Part shown: one piece after another, positions 15,459-57,231 of the stretch | Layout of the letters: every line of letters begins with the position of its first letter | Position numbering within the stretch: position 1 is the first letter of the stretch | Source: Obrimoposthia wandeli | Taxonomy: Eukaryota | Length of the DNA: 64,000 nucleotides | Assembly: GCA_977020255.1 (NCBI GenBank) | Contig: CDROCS010000506.1 | Coordinates: forward strand, 2,294,001-2,358,000 | Direction of reading: 5' to 3' | Notes under the pieces: model-generated | Database searches by the model: none | What the model saw: the letters and a program-made list of their open reading frames with translations, nothing else | Told to the model about the DNA's origin: nothing | Position numbers and translations under genes: made by a program

Positions 15459-15460
15459 TT

Positions 15461-37192: not shown

Positions 37193-37663
37193 ATGAGTAG
37201 ATTTATAGATAGCTGGGCTATCGTGCATATTGATGATTCTTACAATGCATCAGTATTGGGTAGCAGGGGCACTAAGCTGCACTGGTGTAGTGGCCGTAAA
37301 GAAGCTATCGAGTTTATTTATGGCGAGTACTTGGCTATTTTAGCTGATACTGGTGAGATGGATGGTGAGTTAGTGTTTGCCGCGAAGCAACGCTTTAAAG
37401 TATTACAAGCACAAACAAATTCAGATGAAGAATGGATTGAACACGTTAACGAGCTAACCATCGATTTACGCCATATTGTTTGGTTTGGTAGCATTGCTGA
37501 TATGGCTGAACTGAATAATGACTTCGCTTGTGCAGTACGTGAAGTGTATTGGGAAGAGTTTGGTGAATATGACGAAGATGACCCAACGGCTTATGTACCA
37601 GAAGATGAGTGGCTGAATTTATCAGAAGCTTTGGTTGAATATTTAGGCCGTGCAATCGTATAA
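37193..37663 (+). CDS. Hypothetical acidic protein
   Basis: 156-aa ORF with GAGA RBS-like element, no overlap with neighbours; no family recognised. Confidence 0.75.
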   Translation: MSRFIDSWAIVHIDDSYNASVLGSRGTKLHWCSGRKEAIEFIYGEYLAILADTGEMDGELVFAAKQRFKVLQAQTNSDEEWIEHVNELTIDLRHIVWFGSIADMAELNNDFACAVREVYWEEFGEYDEDDPTAYVPEDEWLNLSEALVEYLGRAIV

Positions 37664-38009
37664 AGAATAGTAGACGCTGTGTGTTATAAAAATAGTGACG
37701 CACAGTGATACTTCTAATCCATCCTATTTATGTTCGCCTCGATCAATATTTATATTATTTATTTTTATTCTCCTCAAATAAAGCAATTCAAGTGCTTAAA
37801 AGCCTCTTTTATCTCATTACCCCTTTCTGATGTTATCGCTTACTAGCGTATATGATATTTGCATCTATTATTTGATCTAATATGCTGGATTGTCGTTGAA
37901 TTGCGATATATAAAATCAACATTGATGATTAACTAGCGTTATACATCTTATATTAGAGTGTTTTTCATTTAATTATGTTCGGGTGCACTCGTTACAATTA
38001 AGGTCATCT

Positions 38010-40787
38010 ATGCGATTGATAATGTCTATAAAGCAATTTATTATTTTGTGGACCTTAAGTGTAGGTGTGGGGGCTTATGCTAATTCGCTTGCCGATGTCA
38101 CCTCATTTTCAGCGTCCACAGGTCAGCCCCAATCCATCGCATTTTATTACAATAATATTGATTCTGTTCGCGAGTTAATGAGCTACGATCGTGTCGTTGT
38201 TAACTCTAATTTAATTACTGAAAAACAGATAGAAACCTTACACCTTGCAAATACAAGTGTATTTGCTTATATCAGTATCGGTGAATTTTCGGGCGGTCAA
38301 TTACCTACGTCATTACGTGATGCAGCCATGGTTGAAAACACGACTTGGCATAGTCACGCGATGGATCTTACCTACCCGCGTTGGCAATCTTACTTACTTC
38401 AGCAAGCACAAGGTTATTTAGATAAAGGTTTTGATGGTCTCTTTTTAGATACATTAGATAGTTACATGCTATTTGCGCAAGGTGATGAGCAGCAAGTTCA
38501 GCAACATGCATTAATAAGTATTATTCAACGCTTGCAGATAATGAACCCTCAGCCGAGGCTGATCCTGAATCGTGGTTTTACTATTATACCGGAACTTAAG
38601 CAACCCATCGAAGCCGTTGCAGTTGAATCATTGTGGCATAGCTATCACCCAGTCAATGATAGCTACTTGAATGTGAAAAAGGCGGATACCGCATGGCTAC
38701 AAGGGAAGTTGGAAACCGTTAAATCTCTGGGTATTGAAGCCATCGTTATTGATTATTTACCGACAGCCTCACGACCTGCGCAAATTAAACTGGCGAAGCG
38801 ATTGATTGCTGCGGGTTATACGCCTTACGTCAGTGATGGTTTGTTGTATGAGTTTGGAGTCAGTACGATAAAGCTTATTCCTAAGCGGATATTTGGTTTA
38901 TATAATGGCGCGAATGAACGTAAAATCGATTCATATTGTCATCGCTTAATATCAATGCCCATTGAGTATCAAGGTTACGTGCTTGACTGTAACGATATCA
39001 GTTCTTTGGATTTTAGCCGCATTGATACCAGTAAATACGCTGGTGCTATCATTTGGTTGGATCAAGCTGCTTATAATCAATATCCACAACTATCACAATG
39101 GTTAGCGCAGGTGTTAAACCGTTGGCCTATTTTATTTATCAGTTCATTACCAACAGATAAAAAACTGTTGGCAAAATTAGGTGTGCAGTTAAACGGTCAG
39201 CTTGAGGGGAAAGTAAAAATAACCAAAGGTAGTGAATGGTTTGAAAATAGCTACCCATTATCACTTAGTGAATTTGATGTACATCCTCGTTGGCAAGTTG
39301 CAACGCAAGGGTTGAAGGAACATGTCACTATCGCTGATACACATCATAATACTTCGACACTATTTTTTAGTGCTGATTGGGGTGGGGCGATTATGTCACC
39401 CTTACCGGTATTTAATTTAGCCAATAATAAAGAAAAATGGCTTATTGACCCTTTCAAAATATTTGAATTAACATTGGCGTTGCCGGTCATTCCCGCACCA
39501 GATGTGACGACGGAATCTGGCCGCCGTATTTTAACTAGCCACGTTGATGGCGATGGCTTTTTATCTAAAGGTTGGTTTCCGGGTAAGCCTTATACAGCCG
39601 AAGTCTTACATGATAATGTTTTTAAGGTTTATTCTTTTCCACAAACTGTGTCAGTCATTGAAGGCGAGGTTGGCAGTCGCGGTGTCAATCCGCAACAAAG
39701 TTCAAAACTAGAAGCCATCGCCCGTGATATTTTTAAGTTACCTCACATCGAAATTGCATCACATACTTTCAGTCATCCATTTTTTTGGGGGCAGAATAAG
39801 CACGCTGATAATGAGCAATACGGTGAACATCTACCGATACCAAATTACACGCTAGATTATGAGCAAGAAATACTGGGTTCCATTCGTTACATAAAAGAGA
39901 CGTTAGCACCGAAAGATAAAGCCGTGAACGTTATCTTATGGTCAGGGAAAGCAGATCCTGATGAAGCCACACTCGCCATGGCCGATGATGCAGGATTACT
40001 TAACTTGAACGGAGGTAATACTTTTACTGTTATTGGCAATCATGATTGGAGCAATGTATCACCGACAATCGCTTGGTATCCTTCTGCTGTTCAAGTATAT
40101 GCGCCGGTATTAAATGAGAATTTGTACACTAATCTGTGGCGAGAGAATCATGATGGTTATAAAAGAACGATTGAAACATTCGAACTGTTAGGTCAGCCAC
40201 GTCGTTTAAAAACCATTAGTATTTATTATCATATGTATTCAGGTGCTTATCCTGTATCGCTAAATAGTTTAATTAAAGTTTATGATTGGGCATTAGCTGA
40301 AAAAGTGACACCGTTATATATAAGTGAGTATTCAGCTAGAGCTAAGCACTTGTATGAAACCAGTTTAGCGAAAACCTTAGACGGTAATTGGCTTGTTAAT
40401 TCCACCGGGGTACGCAGTATTAGGTTAGCCAGAGAATTAGGTTTTCCGATTATGAATCAGAGTAATATAGCAGGTTGGGAACGTGGCCCTGATGGTAAGT
40501 ATGTGACCTTAATTGCGCCGAGAACACAATTAACCTTGTCGGTAAAAAATCACAAACAAGTACGTTTATCGAGTGCTAACGGAGTTCTCACAAAGTGGGT
40601 TGTCGATAACGACAGTATTAACTGGGCGTTTTATAGCTATGTGCCTTTGCAGTTAGAAATTGCGAATGCGGCAGGTTGCAGTATTAATACAGGGGGGACG
40701 CTCACGTTCGCTAGAAAAGCGGACCAGACATTATTATTAACCTCATCACAAGCGGGCGCTTTTTCAGGTTCCTTACATTGTAATTAA
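38010..40787 (+). CDS. pelA: PelA: bifunctional Pel glycoside hydrolase (GH166-type) and deacetylase
   Basis: Hydrolase motifs AYISIGE, FDGLFLDTLDSY, ILNRGF, AVESL; deacetylase motifs SHVDGDG, IASHTFSHPF, YYHMYS; probable ATG 38010 after TAAGGT (ORF track GTG 37983). Confidence 0.92.
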   Translation: MRLIMSIKQFIILWTLSVGVGAYANSLADVTSFSASTGQPQSIAFYYNNIDSVRELMSYDRVVVNSNLITEKQIETLHLANTSVFAYISIGEFSGGQLPTSLRDAAMVENTTWHSHAMDLTYPRWQSYLLQQAQGYLDKGFDGLFLDTLDSYMLFAQGDEQQVQQHALISIIQRLQIMNPQPRLILNRGFTIIPELKQPIEAVAVESLWHSYHPVNDSYLNVKKADTAWLQGKLETVKSLGIEAIVIDYLPTASRPAQIKLAKRLIAAGYTPYVSDGLLYEFGVSTIKLIPKRIFGLYNGANERKIDSYCHRLISMPIEYQGYVLDCNDISSLDFSRIDTSKYAGAIIWLDQAAYNQYPQLSQWLAQVLNRWPILFISSLPTDKKLLAKLGVQLNGQLEGKVKITKGSEWFENSYPLSLSEFDVHPRWQVATQGLKEHVTIADTHHNTSTLFFSADWGGAIMSPLPVFNLANNKEKWLIDPFKIFELTLALPVIPAPDVTTESGRRILTSHVDGDGFLSKGWFPGKPYTAEVLHDNVFKVYSFPQTVSVIEGEVGSRGVNPQQSSKLEAIARDIFKLPHIEIASHTFSHPFFWGQNKHADNEQYGEHLPIPNYTLDYEQEILGSIRYIKETLAPKDKAVNVILWSGKADPDEATLAMADDAGLLNLNGGNTFTVIGNHDWSNVSPTIAWYPSAVQVYAPVLNENLYTNLWRENHDGYKRTIETFELLGQPRRLKTISIYYHMYSGAYPVSLNSLIKVYDWALAEKVTPLYISEYSARAKHLYETSLAKTLDGNWLVNSTGVRSIRLARELGFPIMNQSNIAGWERGPDGKYVTLIAPRTQLTLSVKNHKQVRLSSANGVLTKWVVDNDSINWAFYSYVPLQLEIANAAGCSINTGGTLTFARKADQTLLLTSSQAGAFSGSLHCN

Positions 40788-40836
40788 ATCAAGGACGTTA
40801 GCACGATAGAAAGGATGTTAAGTAGATAGGCCAATT

Positions 40837-43800
40837 ATGAATAACCGCCGTTCGAGTGAAGTAACGAACAACAAAAAATCGCGAGTTAAGGTGCTAACGC
40901 TAGTGCCGCTCGCTGTACTTTTGATGTCTGCATTATCTACGCTGTGGTTAATAACACCAACGAAAGAAGTACTGCTTACATTAATTTCTCGCTCAACTTC
41001 GCCGAAGATATCGTTATCATTTTTAAATGTGTTATTAGTTCGAGACCCTAACAATCGTCATATTAAACTGCTCATAGCAAAAAACATCTATCAAACGGGT
41101 GATATCCGTCGTGTCATTGAATTTGTAGAACCTTTGCTTAACGATGCCAACAATAATCAAGATTGGCGAGCTTACTCCTTATATTTAGAAGCCGTGGTCG
41201 AAGGGGGTTATGCGAGAGATGCTAGTTTAAATAGCTATTCAAATCAAAAATTAGACTTATTGTTTAAGAATATCAAACATATTCCGGATGCCAAAGTCGC
41301 GCGTCGATTTGCAGATGTAGCCTTGTCGCTTAACATGCCTGCTCAAGCGTTGAATATATTAAGGCCTCATATAGCAAGTCTTGAGACAAGTTATGAAGAA
41401 CTTATCTCTTTGGCGTTGCAAGTATCCGATTACGACACTGCTTTGACGTTGTTATCTGCTAGTTCAGGGTTATCTTATGATGATACAGGTGTGATAAGAG
41501 GTGCGCATGTTAATACTCAATACAATAAAGGCATAGCTGATAAATTAGCTCGTATACATCAAATATATCGTTGGCAGGGGAGCACGACCAAGGCTCTTGA
41601 AATTAGTTTGTTGCTTGCGGCGCATGAGCCAACGGAGCAAGTATTGCGGGATGGGCTTTCTGAAGCGAAAGCGTTAGGCGATATTTACCATGAGGGGCTT
41701 TTTTATAACCAATTAGCGGTCCGTTCTCAGTTAACTACCGCTGAATATGCACCTTGGTTAAATGCCCTCGAAAAATCTCAAGGAACAGAAGCTGCGCTAA
41801 CTACGTTGGATAAGCTACGTCAAGAAAACCCTGGTAATCGCCAGTTTATTATTGAGTTAGCGCGGCTATACAGTTATTCCAGTACTCACGAACAGGTCAT
41901 CAGTTTACACCCACAGCTTAAAGTTAATGGTCCCTTAATCGCCTCAGAAACACGAAGGTTTGCCAATGCTTACATCATGTTGAATCAACCTGATGATGCT
42001 CTGGCTGTGTTAATTGAACCAACAGATTGGTTAGATGCCGATGACGAATATTTGCAGATGGTGGCTGTATTAGCGTGGGATTTAAGCAATAAAGAAGTGG
42101 CGTTAGCCAGCCAACATGCGTTAATTAAACGTTCAGATAAGCACATAGACGTGTACCGCTATGTTCGGTTACATAGGCCTTTTAGCGAATATGATGTGCC
42201 TGAATTAGTGGCCTTATATCGTCGAACAAAAAATAAGACGTTACTGCTGGAAGCGATGAACGTGGTTGCTAACGGAGTGACTAAAAAGTTAACTTCGCCG
42301 CATGAAGTGGTTAGCAATGAGTATGGAATGGGAAAATTGCTCGATTTAGCATTACAGAACAAAACCATGAATGAGCGCGCTGATGTATATTATTATCGCG
42401 CCATGTACGCAATACAACAGAGTCGGATGCGTGACGGACACCGATTTTTTAGATTATCATTAAATGCAGAACCGTTATTTATACCGACAATCAATAGCTA
42501 TATTTGGTGGGCGATTGAGATCCAAGATCGCAATACGATGCGCGAACTTTATGATAACTATAGTTTTGTACTAAAAGATCATTCCGCATTAGGGTTAACA
42601 TTTGCAACCCTTAGCCAAGAGTTAGCTAATCATCAACATGCGCGCTATTGGTATCAAGAGTATTTATTGGTGGATGAGAAAACGGATATTACAGCGTTGA
42701 TCCACTATGCTTCACTGTTAACCGATATGAAGTTATACGAGCAAGCGAATCGATTACGTTTTTATATTGCCATCCATCATGCTTCATCGCTTGCTGAATT
42801 GCCTAATCATGCAGTATTCCAACATGCTTTGGTCGGTTTGTCGGCTGGTGATGCTGTGGCTGCCAACTTAGCGACAAAGCAAGTATTAATACAGCCGTCA
42901 GCCAGTTCGGTAGCGCAATTTTTTGAATATCAATTGATGACAGGCAATACTGATGCCACACGGTTTTGGTATCAACGGACATCATTATCACATTACGCGC
43001 TACCTAAAAGTCAGTTACTGGCGATAGAAAAGCATAATCAGGTACCTGCACAAGCTGAAGACATAACCACGAGGAGAGATTCTGCATGGATACCAGCATT
43101 ACAATATGCAGATAATGCGAATCAAATACCCTCTCAAATTTCGAGTTGGCAGGTTGAAGGTGGGTTTTATCCACAATTCACAAATTACCGATCGGCATTA
43201 CGCAGTCAATATATAGCCAATACAGCATGGGATATTAATACCGTTCGCTTAGATTATTATCAGCTTGCTAAATTTGGCAACTGGCAACTCAGTAATTATT
43301 ATCAGACCGCGGATAGCACGGGTGTCTTTGCTAGCGATAACATCGAAGATGAATTTCGATTAAGAGGATTAGCGCATTATTGGTTTAATCGAAGTGATTG
43401 GCAGTTTATGTTTGATTTTTCTGAGGGTGTTGGGGAACAGCGACTTGGTCTGAATGTTAATTACAGTACGCAGTTTAATCGACGTTGGCGGTTCGAGCTG
43501 GGAGCAGGGATAAATAATGATATTAGGGCGAGTCAAGCGCTGGCCCTTGCTGGTAGTGACAACGTGGTAAATGCGGGGGCCTTATACCAACCGAGTTACC
43601 GGACTAATGTTGAGTTTAAAGCCAAGTTTCATCAGTTATCGACCCGCTTTGATGACGAGATTGGAGATGGTTGGAGTGGTTCTCTACGTGTCACTGAACA
43701 GTTATTTTTTAATTCACCTGCTTGGCAGATATATGCGGATTATAGTATGCATGAGGTCAATTTAAGTTCTACGCCATTATTAGGTATTAACGACTGGCAC

Positions 43801-44124
43801 CAAGGTCTGACGCCGCTAACCAGCAGTGACTTTATTAGTCCACGTTATCAACGACTCGCACTTGGACAACGATTTTATCGGGGGGCGGTCGGTATATCCG
43901 ATTCGATTAAACAGTTTAATTATTTATCTCAACCTCGTTATTGGTTCGATAGCGCTGTTGGCTATGACCTTGTTACTTCACAGCCTGTGTTATTACTGGG
44001 TTTGGGACTAGGCTGGCCAATCTTTGGTCATGATGAATTGTATTTTAATGTCGATTGGCAAAGCCAAGATCGCAATGGCGAAGAAGCAGAAAAAGTGTCA
44101 ATTGGTTACTTTTATTCTTTTTAA
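40837..44124 (+). CDS. pelB: PelB: TPR-containing outer-membrane export protein
   Basis: N-terminal hydrophobic segment, long helical-repeat region, C-terminal amphipathic beta strands ending GYFYSF; position between pelA and pelC. Confidence 0.85.
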   Translation: MNNRRSSEVTNNKKSRVKVLTLVPLAVLLMSALSTLWLITPTKEVLLTLISRSTSPKISLSFLNVLLVRDPNNRHIKLLIAKNIYQTGDIRRVIEFVEPLLNDANNNQDWRAYSLYLEAVVEGGYARDASLNSYSNQKLDLLFKNIKHIPDAKVARRFADVALSLNMPAQALNILRPHIASLETSYEELISLALQVSDYDTALTLLSASSGLSYDDTGVIRGAHVNTQYNKGIADKLARIHQIYRWQGSTTKALEISLLLAAHEPTEQVLRDGLSEAKALGDIYHEGLFYNQLAVRSQLTTAEYAPWLNALEKSQGTEAALTTLDKLRQENPGNRQFIIELARLYSYSSTHEQVISLHPQLKVNGPLIASETRRFANAYIMLNQPDDALAVLIEPTDWLDADDEYLQMVAVLAWDLSNKEVALASQHALIKRSDKHIDVYRYVRLHRPFSEYDVPELVALYRRTKNKTLLLEAMNVVANGVTKKLTSPHEVVSNEYGMGKLLDLALQNKTMNERADVYYYRAMYAIQQSRMRDGHRFFRLSLNAEPLFIPTINSYIWWAIEIQDRNTMRELYDNYSFVLKDHSALGLTFATLSQELANHQHARYWYQEYLLVDEKTDITALIHYASLLTDMKLYEQANRLRFYIAIHHASSLAELPNHAVFQHALVGLSAGDAVAANLATKQVLIQPSASSVAQFFEYQLMTGNTDATRFWYQRTSLSHYALPKSQLLAIEKHNQVPAQAEDITTRRDSAWIPALQYADNANQIPSQISSWQVEGGFYPQFTNYRSALRSQYIANTAWDINTVRLDYYQLAKFGNWQLSNYYQTADSTGVFASDNIEDEFRLRGLAHYWFNRSDWQFMFDFSEGVGEQRLGLNVNYSTQFNRRWRFELGAGINNDIRASQALALAGSDNVVNAGALYQPSYRTNVEFKAKFHQLSTRFDDEIGDGWSGSLRVTEQLFFNSPAWQIYADYSMHEVNLSSTPLLGINDWHQGLTPLTSSDFISPRYQRLALGQRFYRGAVGISDSIKQFNYLSQPRYWFDSAVGYDLVTSQPVLLLGLGLGWPIFGHDELYFNVDWQSQDRNGEEAEKVSIGYFYSF

Positions 44125-44138
44125 TTAAGGAGATATAA

Positions 44139-44669
44139 ATGAAGTGGTCATTAATCTTAGTAATGCTGTTAACTTTATCGGCATGTTCTAGTCATCGTAT
44201 ACCAGATAGTCCTCCGTTAGCAGCGTCGGCAGCATGGGTTATCATGCCGTTAGAAAATAATTCAAGTACGCCTCTGGCAGCAGAAAAAGCGGAGAGAATA
44301 TTAAGTTCACAATTATATCGAAAAGGTATTAAAGCGGTTGTTTATCCGAAAGCGCCGCTTAATAGCTTAACGGATATTCTCGATCAAACAGTCAAATATA
44401 AACATGCTGAGGCATGGCTTATCACATCTCCAGCAGACTATATTATTAGCGGATCTGTTGAAGAATGGCGTTATAAAAATGGCCTCGATGCAGAACCCGC
44501 TGTTGGCGTTACATTAGAAATTAAAGACGCGAAAACGCATAAAGTAATATGGAGAGCCAGTGCCAGTCGAGTCGGTTGGGGTAGGGAAAGTGTCAGTGGT
44601 GCTGGGATTGAGGTGATCGATACGTTACTCGAGGGGATAAAAATAACTCCGTCTGGGGCGGTGAAATAA
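44139..44669 (+). CDS. pelC: PelC lipoprotein
   Basis: Lipobox LSAC, MPLENNSSTPLAAE, GSVEEWRYKNGLDAEPAVG, GWGRES. Confidence 0.92.
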   Translation: MKWSLILVMLLTLSACSSHRIPDSPPLAASAAWVIMPLENNSSTPLAAEKAERILSSQLYRKGIKAVVYPKAPLNSLTDILDQTVKYKHAEAWLITSPADYIISGSVEEWRYKNGLDAEPAVGVTLEIKDAKTHKVIWRASASRVGWGRESVSGAGIEVIDTLLEGIKITPSGAVK

Positions 44670-44686
44670 CATGATAGTGTTTATTT

Positions 44687-46024
44687 ATGGATAAATTATG
44701 GTGCGGTTTCATCAAACCTCTGCAAGGGGCGCGTTTGGCGTGGATGGAAATCATGTTTATTACTTTGATTTCTGCGGCGAGTTGGGTGTATTTTTATCCC
44801 TTTCCGCAGGGGTTAAAGGCGCATTATTTCTTTTGGCCTTTGCTGGGACCGTTACTGGTTGCTTTACGTTATGGGTTTGCTAAAGGTTTCATTTGTACAA
44901 TGTTAATGACCATCATATTTGTGTTTGTGGCAAAAGATGATGGTGTCTTGCTCTCATTCCCTTTTTCTTTGGTTGTTGGCTTGTTTTTCATGGTTATGGC
45001 CGCCGGTGAGTTTCGAGATCATTGGCAACGTCGTATTGATAAATGTGTACTCGAGCATAAACGTATGCAACAAAAATTAGCCGACTTTACTAAAAATTAT
45101 CATTTACTCAAAGTATCGCATGACCAATTAGAATTACGTCATGTCGGCAAACCTGTCAGTCTTCGTGCAGAAATAAATTCATTGCAGCAACTGGCTCTAC
45201 AGCATAGCGAACGTCGATTAATTCATATTGCCGATCCACTATTGGCCTTACTTGCACATGTCGGTGGGCTACAAGTCGCAGGTATTTATACTGTAATGAA
45301 TGATGATATCGAGCTGCAGCCTAATGCACTCATTGGCGATAAACACAAGCTTGTACTTGATGATCCAATGCTACAAGATATGTTGGAATGTAAAAAACTA
45401 CTCTCCCCGATAACCAGCCATATACCGCATCGTTCACGTTATCAATTATGTATTCCGCTGGTGGATAGTACGGGTAAACTGCAAGCTGTAGTATTAGCTG
45501 AAACAGTGAGGTTTTTTTCATTAACACCCGCGAATGTCGTTTTGCTGTCATTGATTGCTGATAATGCAGCTGATTTATTAAGTCATGATTTATTAACGCC
45601 AGTGTTGATGGAATATCAACATGATCTGTTTATCCGTTATATCTACCGCGCGCATTATAATCACCGAGAGTATGCCATGGATAGTTGCTTAATCATTTTA
45701 GATGACTGCAGTGGTCTACATCATAACGAATTACATAGCTTAATTAATTACCGCCGAGGTGGTGATGTATATTGGGTATGCGAACCACCTAATCAGCCAG
45801 CGCGGCTGATGGTTTTATTGCCACTCACCTCGATGGCAGATAGTCTGCTATACATTTCCCGAGTAAAAGAAGTCTTGTTTGAGAATTTGGGAGAACGCAG
45901 TAATGATATCGATATTTTAGGGCCTTTTTCATTTGATAAAGAGCAAGATAATATTGATGAACTCATTAAAAAATGGGGGCCTAATGATGACAATACTACT
46001 GTTTCTACTGGCGCTTTCGGCTGA
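44687..46024 (+). CDS. pelD: PelD: c-di-GMP receptor (TM, GAF, degenerate GGDEF)
   Basis: LVALRYG, GEFRDHW, LLKVSHDQLE; I-site RxxD retained as RGGD (45755-45766), followed by LMVLLPLT. Confidence 0.9.
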   Translation: MDKLWCGFIKPLQGARLAWMEIMFITLISAASWVYFYPFPQGLKAHYFFWPLLGPLLVALRYGFAKGFICTMLMTIIFVFVAKDDGVLLSFPFSLVVGLFFMVMAAGEFRDHWQRRIDKCVLEHKRMQQKLADFTKNYHLLKVSHDQLELRHVGKPVSLRAEINSLQQLALQHSERRLIHIADPLLALLAHVGGLQVAGIYTVMNDDIELQPNALIGDKHKLVLDDPMLQDMLECKKLLSPITSHIPHRSRYQLCIPLVDSTGKLQAVVLAETVRFFSLTPANVVLLSLIADNAADLLSHDLLTPVLMEYQHDLFIRYIYRAHYNHREYAMDSCLIILDDCSGLHHNELHSLINYRRGGDVYWVCEPPNQPARLMVLLPLTSMADSLLYISRVKEVLFENLGERSNDIDILGPFSFDKEQDNIDELIKKWGPNDDNTTVSTGAFG

Positions 46025-46961
46025 ATTATGGAGCTTCTACGTTTTACTCGGTGCTGATTTTTCAGCGCTAAATTGGGGGCGTTATGCCGCAATACATCTT
46101 GGTGCTTGCGGTGTATTTACTTGGCGTGCTTGGTTATTATTACCGCATGGTTATAAATTCCCAGTATGGCGTAATATTTGTTTTTTATTCAGCTTTTCAT
46201 TTTTCATTCCGCTACTTGGTATGTTTGGTGGCGGCGCTTTATTGGTTGCTTTGTATCGCCCCAAAGTCAATGTTCCTGTTACTTGGGGGGAGTGTGAACC
46301 CACTTCACTTTCCTCCTTATCAACACAATTAGATGTGAATAGTACTCAGCATTATAGTGCTGGGGCACTTCGCGATATATTAATGCATTGTCTGGATCCT
46401 GAACCTCGTTTACAGGCAGTTAATTTTGCTTGTCATTTATCACCGCAACAAGCGATACCAATTCTACAATTAGCGTTAAAGGATTTATCTGATGATGTCC
46501 GACTGTTCTCTTATGCTTCTTTGGAAGAAATGGAAGCTAAAATTAATGTATCAATTACCCAGCTTAAATCGCAATTCGTGTCTCAAAAAAAGGCCGGTAT
46601 AGCGTTCAATATTGCCGAACAGTACTGGGAGTTATGTTATCTCGGCCTCGCTGAAAGCGTGTTGTATTCACACTATCTAGAGCAAGCATCTTGGTACCTT
46701 ACTCGTGCAAATCAGATTACTGAGAGTGCCACGAGTAATTTATTACTTGGACGTATAATGCTAGCGCAGAAAAAACCAGAGCAAGCATTAGGTTACTTAA
46801 CTCGAGCATTAGATGGCGGATTATTGACTCAGCAAGTATTACCTTATCTTGCCGAAGCTAGTTTTGCATTGGGTAACTATGAGTTGACTAAATACTACAT
46901 AACGCAGTTACAAACCAGTAAACATAATCCGTTACAACAACTAAAGGAATATTGGCTATGA
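45984..46961 (+). CDS. pelE: PelE inner-membrane TPR-like protein
   Basis: N-terminal TM helices, ALKDLSDDVRLFSY, YWELCYLGLA; probable ATG 45984 (ORF track starts 45933). Confidence 0.87.
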   Translation: MMTILLFLLALSAELWSFYVLLGADFSALNWGRYAAIHLGACGVFTWRAWLLLPHGYKFPVWRNICFLFSFSFFIPLLGMFGGGALLVALYRPKVNVPVTWGECEPTSLSSLSTQLDVNSTQHYSAGALRDILMHCLDPEPRLQAVNFACHLSPQQAIPILQLALKDLSDDVRLFSYASLEEMEAKINVSITQLKSQFVSQKKAGIAFNIAEQYWELCYLGLAESVLYSHYLEQASWYLTRANQITESATSNLLLGRIMLAQKKPEQALGYLTRALDGGLLTQQVLPYLAEASFALGNYELTKYYITQLQTSKHNPLQQLKEYWL

Positions 46962-48472
46962 AGAACGATGTCGATATTTGTTTGTTGCTTGAAGGCACTT
47001 ATCCCTATGTGCGGGGGGGCGTTTCTAGTTGGATGCATCAAATTATTAAAGGTTTACCTGAATTTTCTTTTCATATCATCTTTTTGGGCAGTGAACCGAC
47101 GTTATATAGCAAGCCTGCTTATGATCTTCCTGATAATGTGGTCGGATTTGAAATACATTATTTATTACCCCTCGAGGATAATAAAATACCAACACCGACC
47201 GTTGGAGACCGCCGTTTATTTGATTCCTGGCAACGTTTTTTAACTTTTTTTAACAGTGCCAAAGAACCGATACCAAGTGAACTGCTTGGTGAGATTGTCG
47301 AATTTTTAGGAAAAAAAAATAAATTAAGTTTGACTGATTTTCTTAATAGTCGAGCTTCATGGGACGTGCTTATTGAGCATTATCAACAACAGCAAACTAA
47401 TGAGTCCTTTGTCGATTTTTTTTGGACATATCGTAATATTTATCAAGCGCTCTTTGTGTTGGCTAGTATCTCTCAATCACTGCCAAATGCGCGGGCTTAT
47501 CATAGTATTTCTACGGGTTATGCAGGATTCTTGGGGGCGTGTTGTCGACAGAAAAGTAACCGACCTTTTTTAATCACTGAGCATGGCATTTATACCAAAG
47601 AACGAAAAATAGATTTATCTCAAGTCAGTTGGATCACAGATAAACATGATTTGTTGGATGTCAGTATGCATAAAAGTATGGATGCAACTCGGCAAACTTG
47701 GACTCGGTTTTTTGAGCAATTGGGCATGTCTGCTTACCATCAGGCCGATCGTGTCGTTGCGCTTTTTGAAGGTAATCGGCAGCGGCAACATGCAGATGGA
47801 GCGACGAGTGATAAAACTCAGGTTATTGCTAATGGTATTGATATAGAACGCTTTTCATCCGCATATGAACAGCGCCTTGATATCCCCCCTATGGTTGTAG
47901 GTTTAGTCGGAAGAGTCGTGCCAATTAAAGATATCAAAACCTTTATCCGTACATTAAAAAGCGCAGTAGAAAAAATACCGACCATAGAGGGCTGGATCAT
48001 TGGGCCCGCGGAAGAAAATGAGATTTATGCGCATGAGTGTAGATTATTAATTAGCAGTTTAGGGTTGGAAGACCGAGTTAAAATGTTAGGAAGCCAAAAT
48101 GTAGCCGAAATTATGCCCAAGCTTGGCATCATGATGTTAACTTCGATCAGTGAGGCACAACCTTTGGTACTACTTGAGGCCATGGCGTCAGGGATCCCTT
48201 GTATTGCAACGGATGTCGGAGCGTGCAGTGAAATTCTTAATGGCATGGTAGGTGAGGATGCGAGTCTTGGTTCCTGCGGTATGATAATCCCAATCGCAAG
48301 CCCCACTGTCGGTGCCAAGGCCATTGTTAAATTATTCTCTGATGCTGGAATATGGCGTAAAACTGGCGATATAGGTAAGACGAGAGTCGCTAAATATTAC
48401 GATCAAGAGTTGATGTACGATGCATATCGACATTTATATAAAGGAGCGATTGATGGCGGGTATCGGCTTTGA
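46958..48472 (+). CDS. pelF: PelF GT4 glycosyltransferase
   Basis: LLEGTYPYVRGGVSSW, STGYAG, TEHGIYTKER, GRVVPIKDIKTF, LTSISEAQPL, TDVG; ATGA overlap with the pelE stop. Confidence 0.95.
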   Translation: MKNDVDICLLLEGTYPYVRGGVSSWMHQIIKGLPEFSFHIIFLGSEPTLYSKPAYDLPDNVVGFEIHYLLPLEDNKIPTPTVGDRRLFDSWQRFLTFFNSAKEPIPSELLGEIVEFLGKKNKLSLTDFLNSRASWDVLIEHYQQQQTNESFVDFFWTYRNIYQALFVLASISQSLPNARAYHSISTGYAGFLGACCRQKSNRPFLITEHGIYTKERKIDLSQVSWITDKHDLLDVSMHKSMDATRQTWTRFFEQLGMSAYHQADRVVALFEGNRQRQHADGATSDKTQVIANGIDIERFSSAYEQRLDIPPMVVGLVGRVVPIKDIKTFIRTLKSAVEKIPTIEGWIIGPAEENEIYAHECRLLISSLGLEDRVKMLGSQNVAEIMPKLGIMMLTSISEAQPLVLLEAMASGIPCIATDVGACSEILNGMVGEDASLGSCGMIIPIASPTVGAKAIVKLFSDAGIWRKTGDIGKTRVAKYYDQELMYDAYRHLYKGAIDGGYRL

Positions 48473-49823
48473 ACTCAGAAAAATATTAAAGCGTAATACG
48501 TTATTATCCATTGTTGAGGCATATGGATTAGCGGGTTTGATTAGTTCAGGCCCTTGGGTATTATCAATTTTAGCCCTGCTGGTGATTGGGATTGTTAGTT
48601 TAGGTACATTCGAGTCTTATGTGATAACTCAATTTTTGATACTCGTGACCTATTTAATGGCGGGTTCACTGATCATCAGTGGATTATTTCAATTACTGTT
48701 AACGCGTTTTATCTCTGATTTAATTTATGCGAAACAAGAACAGCGCATTGTGCCTAATCTGTTAGGTGCGATGTTCGTGACAACGGTATTATCCGCGATT
48801 TTAGCGGGGGGGATTTTGGCTATAGCGGTAGAAATAAATCCACTCACTAAAGTTATTATACTTGCTGCGTTTGTTATTCTTTGTAATCAATGGTTGGTGT
48901 TAATATTTCTGAGTGGGTTAAAAGAATATTACCGAATATTTTTTACGATCGCGGGGTGTTATGGGTTAATGGTGGTTTTATGTATCCTTGTTCCCCCATT
49001 TGGATTGACTGGATTCATGGCTATTTTTACTTTTTGCCAAGCATTGCTCACGTTCATTTTTCTCTATCATGTGATTCGACAATTTCCTGCAAAACGATTA
49101 ATTTTATTTGAATTTATTGATCATGAAAATGTATTTTTCTCGTTGTTGTTTTGTGGTTTTTTTTATAATTTAGGCGTATGGCTGGATAAATTTGTATTTT
49201 GGTCAAGAGATGAAACATCGCATCAAGTATTTAGTTTTTTACGCGCTTCTTATATCTATGACTTACCTATTTTTATTGCTTACCTTGCGATAGTCCCCGG
49301 TATGGCTGTTTTTATTATGCGCATGGAAACTGATTTTTCCCAAGCCTGCTTGAAGTTTTACAATACCGTACGTGAAGGCGGGACGTTGGATGAGATCTAC
49401 CAGCTAAAAGATAACATGGTACTTACTTGCCGGCACAGCATGTATGAAATATTTAAAGTACAGGGAATGACGTTAGTATTGTTATTGTTGTGGAGTGAGG
49501 ATATTTTACAGGCGTTGGACATTGATCTTGCCTATCTGCATTTACTTTATGTCGATCTTATTGGTGTTAGTTTACAAGTGTTAGTCATGGCCATATTAAA
49601 TATCATGTATTACCTAGATAAGCGTTATGCAGCATTAGCATTAACGTTATTTATGGCGGTGAGTAACTTTGTCTTAGCGCATATCAGCATTGAAATAGGA
49701 CCACTATTCTATGGTTATGGTTTTACGTTGACCATGTTACTGACAACGCTTATCGGCTTCATCATGTTAGATAAACAGTTTGCTGACTTAGAATACCAAA
49801 CATTTATGCTGCAGCGCTCATAA
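48453..49823 (+). CDS. pelG: PelG inner-membrane transporter
   Basis: MAGIGFELRK N-terminus, SSGPW, GVWLDKFVFW, YDLPIF, RMETDF; AAGGAG RBS before ATG 48453. Confidence 0.95.
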   Translation: MAGIGFELRKILKRNTLLSIVEAYGLAGLISSGPWVLSILALLVIGIVSLGTFESYVITQFLILVTYLMAGSLIISGLFQLLLTRFISDLIYAKQEQRIVPNLLGAMFVTTVLSAILAGGILAIAVEINPLTKVIILAAFVILCNQWLVLIFLSGLKEYYRIFFTIAGCYGLMVVLCILVPPFGLTGFMAIFTFCQALLTFIFLYHVIRQFPAKRLILFEFIDHENVFFSLLFCGFFYNLGVWLDKFVFWSRDETSHQVFSFLRASYIYDLPIFIAYLAIVPGMAVFIMRMETDFSQACLKFYNTVREGGTLDEIYQLKDNMVLTCRHSMYEIFKVQGMTLVLLLLWSEDILQALDIDLAYLHLLYVDLIGVSLQVLVMAILNIMYYLDKRYAALALTLFMAVSNFVLAHISIEIGPLFYGYGFTLTMLLTTLIGFIMLDKQFADLEYQTFMLQRS

Positions 49824-50708
49824 ACAACTCCATCGGTAGCTATCATCAAGCGCGAGAGGGAGTATTAAGGTGCTAAACTTTCTATTATTAGCATCTAAGC
49901 ATAAGGCATCGCGAGCATCTTGGTCATTAATATATATTTTCTTGTATTCAGCATTAAAAACAGGTTTTTCTGCGTCAATGAAGGGTGTTAGTAGTGCGCA
50001 TTCCTTATACTGAAAGCATTGTTCATTAACAGCGAAATCATAATGTGATACGAGATCGCTAACTTGGTCTAAATTATTTTTAAGGCCAATAGACAGGCCT
50101 TGCTTATGGGCTTCGCTGGCTAACCAGATGTTATAGTCGAGCTGATCAATGGCTGTGAAGCTAAAGCCAGGGTTGTTGGTATAACCATCGACATTGTCTG
50201 GTTCCACGCCATCACAGGCTTTATCTTTGGCGGTGATTAAGCGCGCTTTCATAATGTCTCTTACATTGTCAGAACGAACATCTATCCAACGCTCTCCTGG
50301 CCATTCATCAAGTGGATTGCCAAGATCTGATGCGGTAAATTCGTTTGCATCATCACGCCAATCTTCGTAAGTGCCTGCGGAGAAATAACAAATGACCTTT
50401 TTATTTTGCTCATGTAATGAGGTTATCTGCTGCATGTTAGTATCAAATAAATCAACATCATAAATATTAACGGAGTAACTGGTATTAATTGTTCCTTGCA
50501 GTTGCCATTGCCAAGTATCCATGACTGCGGGCTTGTACCATGGCTCGGGGCTCGGGTCTGGATTGGGAATAGGCTCCGGATCAGGATTGGGTGCTGGAAT
50601 TGGTATGTCAGGCTCCTCAGGTATCGAGGATACATTATCATCACTTGAACAACTGCCAAACCCGATAATCATTAACGCGCTTAAGGTAATTACAAGGACA
50701 TTTCTCAT
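49818..50708 (-). CDS. GH114 endo-alpha-1,4-polygalactosaminidase-like lipoprotein (Ega3-like)
   Basis: Lipobox FGSC (Cys20), Pro-rich linker, WQWQLQG, YDVDLFD, ICYFSAGTYEDWRDD, WPGERWIDVR, DGVEPDNVDGY, GLKN, AVNEQC, VFNAEY. Confidence 0.9.
   Translation of the reverse strand: MRNVLVITLSALMIIGFGSCSSDDNVSSIPEEPDIPIPAPNPDPEPIPNPDPSPEPWYKPAVMDTWQWQLQGTINTSYSVNIYDVDLFDTNMQQITSLHEQNKKVICYFSAGTYEDWRDDANEFTASDLGNPLDEWPGERWIDVRSDNVRDIMKARLITAKDKACDGVEPDNVDGYTNNPGFSFTAIDQLDYNIWLASEAHKQGLSIGLKNNLDQVSDLVSHYDFAVNEQCFQYKECALLTPFIDAEKPVFNAEYKKIYINDQDARDALCLDANNRKFSTLILPLALDDSYRWSCL
50541..50621 (-). repeat. Pro-X low-complexity linker (PEEPDIPIPAPNPDPEPIPNPDPSPEP)
   Basis: Residues 30-56 of the GH114 ORF; imperfect PNPDP duplication. 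Confidence 0.9.
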
Positions 50709-50710
50709 CG

Positions 50711-53245
50711 TTATTTATCCGCTTGATCAACAGTAAAGGTACGACCATTATGATCAACATCGGTAGTAATAAGGCGTTGCCCGCCATAAAATATACCGCC
50801 AGTTATACCCGTTGCTCTTGCTTTAATCGCATCGTCGGCAAATAACGTCACGCTATTGTTATTCCGGTTCCAGGTACCGCGTAGATTAGCTGACTTGGCT
50901 GCTAATTTTTCTTCGGTCATTACCCCGATAGTATAATAATCTAAGTTAATAATTGGCAGGGTCAGTAATTGATTGAAATAATCGGTGACTGCATGCAGCC
51001 AATCGTATTGCAAGGTAAGTCCGTTACCATAATTATGTAAGTTACTAATATGGAAATAGTGTGGCGAAGGACTAAAAGTCAGCATATGCCTAAAGGTAGT
51101 TTCTGCTTCAGCGGCTAATATGCCATTATAATTACGTGGCTGGCAGATAGCACCAGCAATATGACAAGGATTATCTCCAGCCTCAATGTGACGTTCATAA
51201 AATATATAGTTGTACTCGTCGGTTAATTCCTCTGGTGTGGTGACATTATAAAATAAAGAGGTGGGATAACGCGGCAGTAATAAAATATTAGTGTCTGGCA
51301 CATAAGAAGGAATATTTTGGTTTGGACGTGATATATCAGAGGCCATATAACGAATACCTAGTGTGGCCATACTTTCAAATAATTCGGTATTCCGGCCCTC
51401 CGGATAATCAACAAAGATGGACGATGCTTCGTTGGAACTTTCGGAATCTTCTAAGCCAGAATGATTACCCGTTACTAAAACTTGAGATGCATTGGTAAAC
51501 CCTGGAAGGTTCAGACGGAGCCAAAGGATTAGGTTATCACTTATTTCTTGGAAGGCTATATCATAAGTTGCACCTGAACTTTTATACATATCCCGATGGC
51601 TGAAAGTATGATTTAAAAATCGGAAATTATTTTTATATTTGGTTATTGTATCGGTAAGTGGTTCTTGGCTCGTATATCGAATGATTAAACGTGGGCGTCT
51701 GAGTTCTCGGCCGGTTTCAGTACTATAAATTTGAATGGCTTGGTCTGCGTCTGCCATGATCATAAGACCCGCTTTAGGAATATTAGTTTGTTGCCATTGA
51801 TTTACTAGTGATGTGATGTTGGCTTTGATGCGGTTTTTAGCAATTGTGTAGCTTATACAACTTGAAGGATCAAAATCACCACCTTTATTTATCCAACTTC
51901 TTTGTACACTATTGTGTGTCCAGTTGGCTTGATCTTCCCATTTTTGTTGTATTAAGCATATACGTCCTGTACCTGTCACTACTTCACCACGCGCGACTTT
52001 TACTCTCAATTTTAAAACTGCTTTCGAAGATAGGTTGTGAACATTGTCTGGTAATTCAAAAGTAACGAGTGCTCGCGCTTGCTGTGTACTTGAATTATTT
52101 ATATTCAGTACTTTACTTTCAGCATAACTACTACTTTGTCTTGCTGAACTAATGTAAGTATCAGAGATGGATTCTAATATCACTTTCGCTGGCGTGTTTA
52201 CTGAAGCGCCAGCACCGTTAAATACCATATCTAGTTTAAAGTTAGTTAAATTTGAATATGTCGAATTAAATTGATTGTTCGCTGCGACGATATTCTCTAT
52301 ATCATTTGCGGTGTTGCGGTAAATTTTATAATCGTTAGTTATATTTTTTAGTGGATCCCAAATTTCGTCGGCAAGATAGAGATCATCAATGTGTGCTGCG
52401 AGATAAACTTGGCGGGAACCAATAAATACACCTTGTGTGGCAAAGTTTAAAAATTCGTAATTTAATAACTGTGAATAAATCAAATACCAAGCATTGGTGA
52501 TACTTGAAAATAGTACTTCGCGACCGTCGTTATAGATTAATTTTGATACCATTATTTTACCCGATGCTTTGTCAGTAAGCAGTGGTGTAACGACCGGCCC
52601 ATTTGGATCTAGACTCGGTGTTGTGATTATGGTGTAGTCAGTGATAGGGAGGGTATTGGCTTTATTTACATATTCAAAGATGTCATTGTTGTTAATGGGT
52701 AACTGCCAGACGCCGGTATAAGAAAACCCCGCGACCAACGAATTCATATCCATCCCATAGTCTAGATCGTAAGTGACTCGGAAATATTCACCTGACATCG
52801 GATACCCAGATAATACCGATTCTCGGACTTTAAAATCACGCTCATAAGCATGTAATCGCTTCCATTCTTCTAGTGTGAATGCAGAGCCGTTAACGTTACC
52901 GTTGCCCAAATAATACAGCGAACTGTCGGTTAAAATTATACCGTTGTAATTACCTTGGTCATTTGTCACTAACACATCATCTGTGAGTTCGGTTTGTGTC
53001 GCGTCTAAAACATCATAAGGAACGCCCATTTCATCGAGCATATCATCGATTAAATCTAAACCTTGATCTTGCTCTGCAGTACCAGTAGTGATCACTAAAA
53101 CTTTTAAGTCCACGATAGGTGTACTACTTGCTGATAAAGGTAATAACAATAAGATCGGCAGAATAAATAACCAAGGTGGTGTTTTTAATATGCGCGCGAC
53201 TTTACTGGATGCTTTATTGAGTAACATACTGTGACTCCAATACAT
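50711..53245 (-). CDS. Secreted Agd3 (CE18)-like carbohydrate deacetylase with inserted DNRLRE-like domain
   Basis: Signal-peptide-like WLFILPILLLLPLSAS; GVPYDVL and YNGIIL N-domain; YLAAHIDDLYL (HIDD at 52382-52393), FLNHTFSH (HTFSH at 51596-51610), LLPRYPTSLFYN, PHYFHISNL. Family recognised from motif order, not from a search; true start may be ATG 53227. Confidence 0.78.
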   Translation of the reverse strand: MYWSHSMLLNKASSKVARILKTPPWLFILPILLLLPLSASSTPIVDLKVLVITTGTAEQDQGLDLIDDMLDEMGVPYDVLDATQTELTDDVLVTNDQGNYNGIILTDSSLYYLGNGNVNGSAFTLEEWKRLHAYERDFKVRESVLSGYPMSGEYFRVTYDLDYGMDMNSLVAGFSYTGVWQLPINNNDIFEYVNKANTLPITDYTIITTPSLDPNGPVVTPLLTDKASGKIMVSKLIYNDGREVLFSSITNAWYLIYSQLLNYEFLNFATQGVFIGSRQVYLAAHIDDLYLADEIWDPLKNITNDYKIYRNTANDIENIVAANNQFNSTYSNLTNFKLDMVFNGAGASVNTPAKVILESISDTYISSARQSSSYAESKVLNINNSSTQQARALVTFELPDNVHNLSSKAVLKLRVKVARGEVVTGTGRICLIQQKWEDQANWTHNSVQRSWINKGGDFDPSSCISYTIAKNRIKANITSLVNQWQQTNIPKAGLMIMADADQAIQIYSTETGRELRRPRLIIRYTSQEPLTDTITKYKNNFRFLNHTFSHRDMYKSSGATYDIAFQEISDNLILWLRLNLPGFTNASQVLVTGNHSGLEDSESSNEASSIFVDYPEGRNTELFESMATLGIRYMASDISRPNQNIPSYVPDTNILLLPRYPTSLFYNVTTPEELTDEYNYIFYERHIEAGDNPCHIAGAICQPRNYNGILAAEAETTFRHMLTFSPSPHYFHISNLHNYGNGLTLQYDWLHAVTDYFNQLLTLPIINLDYYTIGVMTEEKLAAKSANLRGTWNRNNNSVTLFADDAIKARATGITGGIFYGGQRLITTDVDHNGRTFTVDQADK

Positions 53246-53436
53246 GTTTAAATGATGATATTAAATAGACGTTATCCGCTGATACCTTGTGAATACGTGT
53301 TGACGCATGATTGGGATAGCGCTTGTAATAACATTTTAAAGTGTAGACATTAAATCTAGCAGTGTAAAATACTGCATAGTGTCTTTTAACGTGATAGATA
53401 ACTGGTATAGACTTATCTTTTAAAATTAGCTACATT

Positions 53437-53456
53437 AACTGTTTATTCATACAGTT
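53437..53456. promoter_or_regulatory. LexA (SOS) box upstream of topB
   Basis: AA-CTGT-TTATTCAT-ACAG-TT: exact CTGT-N8-ACAG with palindromic flanks; the core ends 18 bp before the topB ATG and TATAAT lies at 53457-53462. Confidence 0.8.
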
Positions 53457-53472
53457 TATAATTGCTAACATC

Positions 53473-56571: not shown

Positions 56572-56573
56572 TT

Positions 56574-57152: not shown

Positions 57153-57231
57153 CGTTGCTAGCCTCAAAAAACGTTATTTTTATCTCATATTCACTATTAC
57201 TTTATAAATAAGTTAGTAAATAATATTTTCT

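What the first reader, a model, noticed from the sequence alone, without database searches (positions are those of the whole stretch)
37983..53245. Hybrid Pel / galactosaminogalactan-like system: full pelA-G plus a convergent Agd3-like + Ega3-like module
Seen: seven pel genes on +, and on - a two-gene operon (2 nt between the upstream stop and the downstream ATG) encoding a CE18-like deacetylase and a GH114 hydrolase. Known: Pel and Aspergillus fumigatus GAG are both partly de-N-acetylated alpha-1,4-GalNAc/GalN polymers; the fungal cluster uses Agd3 (CE18) and Ega3 (GH114), while Pseudomonas uses PelA for both activities. PelA here keeps both its hydrolase and deacetylase motifs, so the locus appears to carry two deacetylases and two hydrolases from unrelated families. 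Inference: since Ega3 cleaves deacetylated GalN stretches, the extra pair could be a deacetylate-then-cut remodelling or dispersal module, or could make a more cationic Pel. I know of no description of this arrangement in a Gram-negative pel locus, but cannot exclude one.
Basis: partly seen in the sequence, partly recalled or inferred. Interest (0 to 1): 0.9.

Follow-up and report, generated by a model that had tools for sequence, protein, structure and literature searches.

The report
Pel locus with extra Agd3/Ega3-like pair
A Moritella-type marine bacterium carries a complete Pel biofilm-polysaccharide operon with an extra, separately transcribed deacetylase and hydrolase like those fungi use on a similar polymer; the genes are real, but a 2020 paper already described this arrangement and its function is untested.

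Summary
Seven plus-strand genes are pelABCDEFG. They converge on a two-gene minus-strand operon: an 844-aa Agd3-like CE18 deacetylase, then 2 nt later a 296-aa GH114 Ega3-like hydrolase. All catalytic residues I could map are kept in PelA (both domains), in the Agd3-like protein and in the GH114.

- The arrangement is published. Bamford et al. 2020 (PMC7229062) name Moritella among bacteria with Agd3 homologs. They call GH114 co-occurrence "highly consistent" and list gene orders with PelA + Agd3 + GH114.
- The complete genome of Moritella yayanosii DB21MT-5 has the same locus.
- The enzyme families are distantly related, not unrelated.
- Only two of the five fungal GAG genes are present, so "hybrid GAG system" overstates it.

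In my survey of 72 Agd3-like loci, 21 are linked to pel genes. Of 12 Agd3+GH114 pairs outside Actinomycetota, 11 sit beside pel genes. In a Hahellaceae genome a close relative heads a pel operon that has no PelA deacetylase domain.

Best reading (about 0.55): an accessory, separately regulated module that further deacetylates Pel and cuts its deacetylated stretches. The scan had already noted both genes on this same window. Interest is low to moderate.

The parts
37983..40787 (+). pelA: bifunctional GH166 hydrolase plus CE21 deacetylase. The true start may be an internal Met.
   Evidence: E 8e-164 to 9CGY PelA over residues 48-907. D156 and E215 (hydrolase) align with Pa D160/E218. H520, D522, D524, H594, H598, E712 and H750 align with Pa H526, D528, D530, H600, H604, E723 and H761, named in PMC12022489.
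40837..44124 (+). pelB: TPR scaffold plus outer-membrane beta-barrel porin
   Evidence: PF24604 at E 3e-30 and TPR_15
44139..44669 (+). pelC: outer-membrane lipoprotein (LSAC lipobox)
   Evidence: E 3e-36 to PelC 9H80; N-terminus
44687..46024 (+). pelD: c-di-GMP receptor
   Evidence: PF16963. E 1e-26 to PelD 4ETX, with RGGD aligned to the RGLD I-site.
45933..46961 (+). pelE: inner-membrane TPR-like protein. The real start is probably about 17-20 codons downstream.
   Evidence: Weak TPR hits only. 63% identical to the Moritella PelE position. The M. yayanosii ortholog is 322 aa.
46952..48472 (+). pelF: GT4 glycosyltransferase
   Evidence: NF038011 PelF equivalog at 642 bits
48420..49823 (+). 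pelG: inner-membrane exporter-like protein. Its 3' end overlaps the GH114 3' end by 6 nt.
   Evidence: PF16933 at 444 bits. TCATAA at 49818-49823 holds both stop codons.
49818..50708 (-). GH114 Ega3-like endo-alpha-1,4-polygalactosaminidase. It is probably a lipoprotein on a Pro/Glu/Asp-rich linker.
   Evidence: PF03537 at 298 bits. E 3e-60 to Ega3 6OJ1. D171 and E229 align with Ega3 D189 and E247. GFGSC lipobox-like signal and PEP-rich linker.
50711..53245 (-). Agd3-like CE18 deacetylase with an N-terminal CBM87 domain, a split CE domain and a C-terminal beta domain. It has a Sec-type signal peptide, judged by inspection.
   Evidence: PF25116 and PF25115. Fold search hits 6NWZ at E 6e-33. D287/D288, H546/H550, R659 and H732 match Agd3 D377/D378, H510/H514, R613 and H668.
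51680..52162 (-). DNRLRE/CBM96-like beta-sandwich (residues ~362-522). It is inserted between catalytic motifs CM1 and CM2, where Agd3 has its 64-aa beta2 insertion.
   Evidence: NF033679 at E 7e-14. The model matches the alginate-binding CBM 7VBO and the chondroitin-sulfate-binding CBM 8WAB.
53246..53472 (.). Intergenic region shared with divergent topB. This is the presumed promoter region of the Agd3-like/GH114 operon.
   Evidence: Position only. The promoter-like matches here are no more frequent than in shuffled sequence.

Best explanation
The locus is a canonical c-di-GMP-controlled Pel synthase-dependent system (pelABCDEFG) with an accessory two-gene operon that also acts on Pel.

Proposed steps:
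1. The Agd3-like CE18 enzyme is exported by a Sec signal. It binds the alpha-1,4-GalNAc/GalN chain through its CBM87 groove and removes further N-acetyl groups by the metal-dependent Asp/His mechanism.
2. The lipid-anchored GH114 then cuts within the GalN-rich stretches that result.
3. The pair has its own promoter. It converges on pelG with a 6-nt tail-to-tail overlap and no terminator between. It can therefore be expressed independently of synthesis, and possibly in opposition to it. That would tune Pel charge, chain length, cell association or release.

Shown here: gene identities, intact catalytic residues, export signals by inspection, and recurrent linkage to pel.

Inferred: Pel as the substrate, the order of action, and the regulatory consequence of the convergent overlap.
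For: 1. All catalytic residues are conserved in both proteins.
2. The same locus, including the 6-nt overlap, is in M. yayanosii DB21MT-5. The same gene order is in Moritella sp. PE36 and a Moritella MAG.
3. 21 of 72 Agd3-like loci, from one genome per species, have pel genes within 10 kb. These lie in at least four separated clades of the Agd3-like tree: Moritella/Vibrio/Hahellaceae, Nitrosomonadaceae, deltaproteobacteria and Nitrospirae.
4. Of 17 loci with GH114 within 10 kb of Agd3-like, 11 are pel-linked and 5 are actinobacterial, 4 of those next to a distant PelF-like GT4 gene. Only 1 shows neither a pel nor a GT4 gene in the DNA held.
5. In Hahellaceae locus L016 a protein of the window's own well-supported clade heads an operon of Agd3-like, stand-alone PelA-hydrolase-like protein, PelB, D, E, F and G. 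No CE21 domain is present. Nitrosomonas loci L044 and L050 likewise lack CE21. So CE18 can stand in for the PelA deacetylase domain.
6. Literature: Ega3 is specific for deacetylated regions, and agd3/ega3 are described as functionally linked (PMC7229062). Pel is a GalN-GalNAc alpha-1,4 polymer (PMC9135694 title).
Against: - There are no biochemical or genetic data for any bacterial CE18 or pel-linked GH114.
- PelA here is fully intact, so the pair is not needed to supply a missing activity.
- Agd3-like genes are orphans in Pseudocolwellia and a Psychrobiaceae MAG, both in the same clade.
- GH114 genes are very common stand-alone genes in marine gammaproteobacteria.
- Vibrio sinensis and V. mytili pel loci carry Agd3-like without a nearby GH114.
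- Agd3 M666, which its authors report as important, is Tyr here.
- The inserted CBM96-like domain resembles binders of anionic polymers, not cationic ones.
- Promoter and terminator scans gave nothing above chance.
Confidence: 0.55

Rival explanations
1. The pair is a catabolic, foraging or competition module. It breaks down polygalactosamine-type polymers, which could be the cell's own stored Pel, fungal GAG, or Pel from other bacteria, for nutrition or to disrupt competitors. It would not be part of Pel maturation.
For: More than 7,800 GH114 homologs were found at E<=1e-10 among the 8,000 candidates scored. Those with source names are mostly marine bacteria, and the one whose neighbourhood I read (Litoribrevibacter) is a lone gene. 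Orphan Agd3-like genes exist. The pair is in a separate transcription unit in the opposite orientation. Zhang et al. 2021 suggest Pel may be a reserve carbon source in piezophilic Moritella (PMC8477399).
Against: No transporter or GalN/GalNAc catabolic gene lies next to the pair. The pair is tightly and repeatedly placed beside pel. In L016 the Agd3-like gene is the first gene of a pel operon. A lipid-anchored hydrolase is not obviously a foraging enzyme.
Confidence: 0.22
2. The locus is an evolutionary intermediate with redundancy. The CE18/GH114 pair duplicates the two PelA activities. It persists as a backup or on the way to replacing PelA, or being replaced by it, without a distinct role.
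For: Pel loci exist with CE18 and no CE21 (L016, L044, L050), with both (Moritella, Vibrio, Nitrosomonadaceae), and classically with CE21 only (Suppl. Data 2 of PMC7229062).
Against: Both sets keep every mapped catalytic residue. The arrangement is conserved among Moritella genomes whose Agd3-like proteins are only 66-69% identical, which argues for selection on both. Ega3 and PelA hydrolase have different reported specificities.
Confidence: 0.15
3. The pair is a chance neighbour acting on a different glycan, such as another GalNAc-containing surface polymer, and is unrelated to Pel.
For: The transcription unit is independent. 51 of 72 Agd3-like loci show no pel gene within 10 kb, although many of those contigs are short.
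Against: Linkage recurs in several proteobacterial classes and in a Nitrospirae genome. 11 of the 12 pairs outside Actinomycetota are pel-linked.
Confidence: 0.05

Closest known systems
Bacterial Agd3-homolog operons near pel genes (Bamford et al. 2020, Nat Commun, PMC7229062, Fig. 8c and Suppl. Data 2)
   Same: CE18 Agd3 homolog plus GH114 beside pel genes in Gram-negative bacteria. Moritella is named as a genus with Agd3 homologs. The listed gene orders include PelA together with Agd3 and GH114 (Stigmatella, Nitrosospira multiformis, Nitrosomonas communis).
   Different: That report is bioinformatic only. It does not discuss the intact bifunctional PelA coexisting with the pair, the convergent 6-nt overlap with pelG, or the CBM96-like insertion.
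Aspergillus fumigatus GAG cluster (uge3, sph3, gtb3, agd3, ega3)
   Same: An adjacent Agd3-type deacetylase and an Ega3-type GH114. The substrate is likely a partially deacetylated alpha-1,4-GalNAc polymer.
   Different: The synthase here is the Pel machinery, not Gtb3. There is no Sph3/GH135 and no Uge3 in the window. The GH114 is lipid-anchored rather than a type II membrane protein. The deacetylase carries an extra inserted beta-sandwich, and M666 is replaced by Tyr.
Pseudomonas aeruginosa pelABCDEFG
   Same: All seven genes are in the same order. The PelA catalytic residues, the PelD RxxD site and the PelC lipobox are conserved.
   Different: P. aeruginosa has no CE18 or GH114 partner genes at the locus (from my knowledge of that locus, not checked here).
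Bacillus cereus PelA_DA (CE26/CBM114; PMC13254593)
   Same: A Pel-system deacetylase with a three-domain, Agd3-reminiscent architecture, shown to deacetylate alpha-1,4-GalNAc oligosaccharides.
   Different: It belongs to a different CE and CBM family, comes from a Gram-positive operon, and is the sole deacetylase of that system.

Membership tests
Pel synthase-dependent system (pelABCDEFG) | PelA with both a GH166 hydrolase domain and a CE21 deacetylase domain, catalytic residues intact | tested here: met
   Full-length alignment to 9CGY at E 8e-164. D156/E215 and H520/D522/D524/H594/H598/E712/H750 are conserved.
Pel synthase-dependent system (pelABCDEFG) | PelB (TPR plus C-terminal porin), PelC lipoprotein, and PelD c-di-GMP receptor with RxxD | tested here: met
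   PF24604 and TPR. PelC hits 9H80 at E 3e-36. PelD hits 4ETX at E 1e-26 with RGGD.
Pel synthase-dependent system (pelABCDEFG) | PelF GT4 glycosyltransferase, PelG, and PelE in the canonical order | tested here: met
   NF038011 at 642 bits and PF16933 at 444 bits. PelE is identified only by position and by 63% identity to the Moritella PelE.
CE18 (Agd3 family) | Catalytic motifs CM1-CM4: base Asp, the Asp/His/His metal triad, the activating Arg, and the acid His | tested here: met
   D287, D288, H546, H550, R659 and H732 align to Agd3 D377, D378, H510, H514, R613 and H668. D287, D288, H546, R659 and H732 are invariant in the 16-sequence alignment A1.
CE18 (Agd3 family) | Three-domain architecture: CBM87, CE domain and C-terminal beta domain | tested here: met
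   Pfam CBM87_Agd3 and Agd3_CE are above cut-off. The AF2 model matches 6NWZ over its whole length, E 6e-33 and TM 0.74 by target. One extra inserted domain is present.
CE18 (Agd3 family) | De-N-acetylation of alpha-1,4-GalNAc polymer | not testable with these tools
   This needs an enzyme assay.
GH114 (Ega3 family) | GH114 TIM-barrel with the catalytic Asp and Glu | tested here: met
   PF03537 at 298 bits. E 3e-60 to 6OJ1. D171 and E229 align to D189 and E247 and are invariant in alignment A2.
Fungal GAG biosynthetic cluster | All five genes present: Uge3 epimerase, Gtb3 synthase, Sph3 (GH135), Agd3 and Ega3 | tested here: not met
   Only Agd3-like and Ega3-like are present. No GH135 or Gtb3-type protein was found among the window's ORFs of 150 aa or more. 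The only epimerase-like hit is a weak one in the NAD-binding ORF at 36266-37096.

The most novel reading that the evidence does not exclude
In piezophilic Moritella the convergent Agd3-like/GH114 operon could be a second-stage switch regulated against Pel synthesis. Transcription running into pelG, and the reverse, would set synthesis against remodelling. The CE18 enzyme would turn the alternating GalN-GalNAc Pel into long GalN runs. The lipid-anchored GH114 would then cut those runs to release or reshape the matrix. The CBM96-like insertion would dock the deacetylase on an anionic matrix partner, such as an acidic polysaccharide or eDNA. That would be a mode of exopolysaccharide tailoring not described for any Pel system.
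Probability: 0.15. Interest if true: 0.55.

Novelty: already known. Interest (0 to 1): 0.3.

Why it matters
Pel and fungal GAG are chemically similar cationic biofilm polymers. How much they are deacetylated, and where they are cut, controls adhesion and matrix properties. A locus holding both the bacterial (CE21/GH166) and the fungal-type (CE18/GH114) tailoring enzymes is a natural system for asking two questions. Do the two enzyme sets have different specificities? Does CE18 replace PelA in lineages that lack its deacetylase domain? The co-localisation itself was reported in 2020. What remains open is the biochemistry and the physiology, not the existence of the arrangement.

Tried and rejected
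- Promoter and terminator scans of 37-54 kb gave fewer matches than shuffled sequence, so they say nothing about regulation.
- GC content is flat at about 0.40 across the locus, so there is no compositional sign of recent transfer.
- I looked for the window's own genome record through an exact PelC look-up. Only a 3.9-kb Logan contig came back. The organism is therefore inferred only as Moritella-like, from 66-69% (Agd3-like) and 82% (PelG) identity to Moritella genomes and from identical synteny with M. yayanosii.
- The look-up of the Vibrio sinensis GH114 position failed. It is not within 10 kb of either Agd3-like copy there.
- The idea that PelA here might be degenerate, making the pair a replacement, is rejected: all mapped residues are kept.
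- The idea of a complete GAG-type cluster is rejected.
Full report
**What is in the sequence.** The seven plus-strand genes are pelABCDEFG.
- PelA aligns over residues 48-907 with the solved P. thermotolerans PelA (9CGY, E 8e-164).
- PelB has the PelB beta-barrel and TPR domains, and PelG matches PF16933 at 444 bits.
- PelF is an NCBIfam PelF equivalog at 642 bits.
- PelC matches the solved PelC 9H80 at E 3e-36 and has an LSAC lipobox.
- PelD matches the solved PelD 4ETX at E 1e-26, with RGGD at the RxxD c-di-GMP site.
- PelE is recognised only by position and by similarity to other pel loci.

On the minus strand, the 844-aa ORF ends in TAA. Two nucleotides later comes the ATG of the 296-aa ORF. 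The pelG stop codon and the 296-aa ORF's stop codon are the adjacent triplets TCA and TAA at 49818-49823. The two convergent units therefore overlap by 6 nt with no room for a terminator.

**The two extra enzymes.** The 296-aa protein is a GH114 (PF03537, 298 bits). It is about 50% identical to A. fumigatus Ega3 (6OJ1, E 3e-60).
- Its D171 and E229 align with the Ega3 catalytic pair D189/E247. Both are invariant among ten homologs.
- Its N-terminus has a lipobox-like GFGSC followed by a Pro/Glu/Asp-rich linker. The linker length varies among Moritella orthologs, and related marine GH114s have classical xGC lipoboxes.
- I read it as a lipoprotein. This is by inspection only.

The 844-aa protein passes the Pfam thresholds for CBM87_Agd3 and Agd3_CE.
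- An AlphaFold model (pLDDT 81) has Agd3 (6NWZ) as its best PDB match, E 6e-33 and TM 0.74 by target.
- Using the constant offset of 122 between 6NWZ chain numbering and Agd3 numbering, D287/D288, H546/H550, R659 and H732 correspond to D377/D378, H510/H514, R613 and H668. These are the residues Bamford et al. showed to be essential.
- Agd3 M666 is Tyr here.
- Residues ~362-522 form a DNRLRE-type beta-sandwich (NF033679, E 7e-14). It is inserted between CM1 and CM2, and it resembles the alginate-binding CBM 7VBO and the chondroitin-sulfate-binding CBM 8WAB.

**PelA is intact.** D156 and E215 align with the hydrolase residues D160 and E218 of PaPelA. E218 is from my memory of the PelA hydrolase work and was not checked here. 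H520, D522, D524, H594, H598, E712 and H750 align with H526, D528, D530, H600, H604, E723 and H761, which PMC12022489 names for the deacetylase. The locus therefore really encodes two deacetylases and two hydrolases.

They are not from unrelated families, however. The PelA deacetylase defines CE21, described as distantly homologous to CE4 and CE18. The Pfam GH114 model detects the PelA hydrolase domain at E 3.5e-9.

**Organism and synteny.** The nearest named relatives of the Agd3-like protein are from Moritella, at 67-69% identity. The complete genome of M. yayanosii DB21MT-5 (LS483250.1) has the same gene order, including the 6-nt overlap: dsbD, ygbA, an NAD-binding protein, a 158-aa ORF, pelABCDEFG, GH114 and Agd3-like on the opposite strand, then topB. 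Moritella sp. PE36 and a Moritella MAG show the same order as far as the fetched DNA reaches. Zhang et al. 2021 report a pel operon only in the piezophilic strains DB21MT-5 and PE36 (PMC8477399).

**Is the pair tied to pel?** I scanned one genome per species with an alignment of 16 homologs and recovered 72 loci. I then searched them with the window's proteins, with PelA split into domains.
- 21 of the 72 loci have pel genes within 10 kb. They come from gamma-, beta- and deltaproteobacteria and one Nitrospirae genome.
- 17 loci have a GH114 within 10 kb of the Agd3-like gene. Of these, 11 are pel-linked and 5 are actinobacterial, 4 of those next to a distant PelF-like GT4 gene. Only 1 shows neither a pel nor a GT4 gene in the DNA held.
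- A full PelA together with Agd3-like and GH114 occurs in five Nitrosomonadaceae loci as well as in Moritella.
- On a FastTree of 69 Agd3-like proteins, the pel-linked genes fall in at least four separated, well-supported clades.
- The window's protein sits in a clade of ten (support 98). Seven of the ten are pel-linked.
- One member of that clade, Hahellaceae locus L016, heads an operon of Agd3-like, a stand-alone 282-aa PelA-hydrolase-like protein, PelB, PelD, PelE, PelF and PelG. No CE21 domain is present.
- Nitrosomonas loci L044 and L050 are similar.
[quoted passage not shown] These CE21-less operons therefore imply that CE18 enzymes of this clade act on the Pel polymer.

Evidence on the other side:
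- Two members of the same clade are orphan genes, in Pseudocolwellia and a Psychrobiaceae MAG.
- The Vibrio pel loci carry Agd3-like without a nearby GH114.
- GH114 genes are numerous among marine gammaproteobacteria, and the one whose neighbourhood I read stands alone.

**Comparison with what is known.** Bamford et al. 2020 (PMC7229062) already reported several of these points:
- Agd3 homologs in 45 bacterial species, including Moritella, Burkholderia and Stigmatella.
- GH114 co-occurrence that is "highly consistent".
- Gram-negative operons containing Pel-machinery homologs, and some homologs located near Pel genes.

Their Supplementary Data 2 lists gene orders that combine PelA, Agd3 and GH114. 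One example is Nitrosomonas communis: "PelB, GH, D, E, F, G, GH114, A, Agd3, GH114, Agd3". NCBI already names the M. yayanosii ortholog "Agd3-related carbohydrate deacetylase" and the GH114s "endo alpha-1,4 polygalactosaminidase". The arrangement is therefore known. No paper found in my searches reports biochemistry or genetics for a bacterial CE18 or a pel-linked GH114. The label "hybrid GAG system" is too strong, because the window has no GH135 or Gtb3-type synthase and only a weak epimerase-like hit.

**Mechanism and verdict.** The best-supported reading (about 0.55) is an accessory, separately transcribed Pel-tailoring module. The exported CE18 deacetylates Pel further, and the tethered GH114 cleaves the GalN-rich stretches. 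This fits the reported Ega3 specificity for deacetylated regions. The rivals are a catabolic or competitive role (0.22), plain redundancy or an evolutionary intermediate (0.15), and an unrelated neighbour (0.05).

On novelty the arrangement is already known. Interest is low to moderate, because the functional question is open but the discovery is not new.

Noticed in passing
window 1-16080: Three rRNA operons lie in tandem on the plus strand: a partial 16S at 1-744, then 23S/5S, followed by two complete 16S-23S-5S sets, with tRNAs in the spacers. They are immediately followed by recC, recB and recD (16371-25386).
   Followed up: partly
window 51680-52162 (-), residues ~362-522 of the Agd3-like protein: The DNRLRE/CBM96-like insertion between CM1 and CM2 occurs in the gammaproteobacterial clade and in several actinobacterial Agd3-like proteins. 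It was not detected in the Nitrosomonadaceae or Chromatiales clades. Its structural relatives bind anionic polymers (alginate, chondroitin sulfate), which is odd for an enzyme of a cationic polymer.
   Followed up: partly
L003 and L008 (Vibrio sinensis NZ_QVMU01000001.1): Two pel gene sets lie in tandem on one scaffold. Each is preceded, in the same orientation, by its own Agd3-like gene about 400 nt upstream of pelA. No GH114 lies within 10 kb.
   Followed up: partly
L016:10019-22433 (Hahellaceae MAG): A pel operon in which PelA is replaced by two genes: an Agd3-like CE18 deacetylase with the insertion, and a stand-alone 282-aa PelA-hydrolase-like protein. No PelC match was found. Glycogen-metabolism genes lie upstream.
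   Followed up: partly
L050:10333-11754 (Nitrosomonas sp. JL21): The pel-linked GH114 here is 473 aa and carries an N-terminal 'GH114_assoc' domain (PF14741), which the Moritella enzyme lacks.
   Followed up: no
window 49818-49823; L080:18965-18970: The 6-nt tail-to-tail overlap of pelG and the GH114 gene is conserved between this genome and M. yayanosii. The transcripts must overlap at their 3' ends.
   Followed up: partly
window 37193-37663 (+): A 156-aa ORF with no Pfam match lies directly upstream of pelA. It is conserved in position in M. yayanosii, where it is 158 aa. Its function is unknown.
   Followed up: no
window 55549-61253: msrP/msrQ-like genes (Oxidored_molyb, Ferric_reduct) are followed by a NapC/NirT-type cytochrome and a molybdopterin oxidoreductase, which looks like a TMAO/DMSO reductase. 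The order matches M. yayanosii.
   Followed up: no
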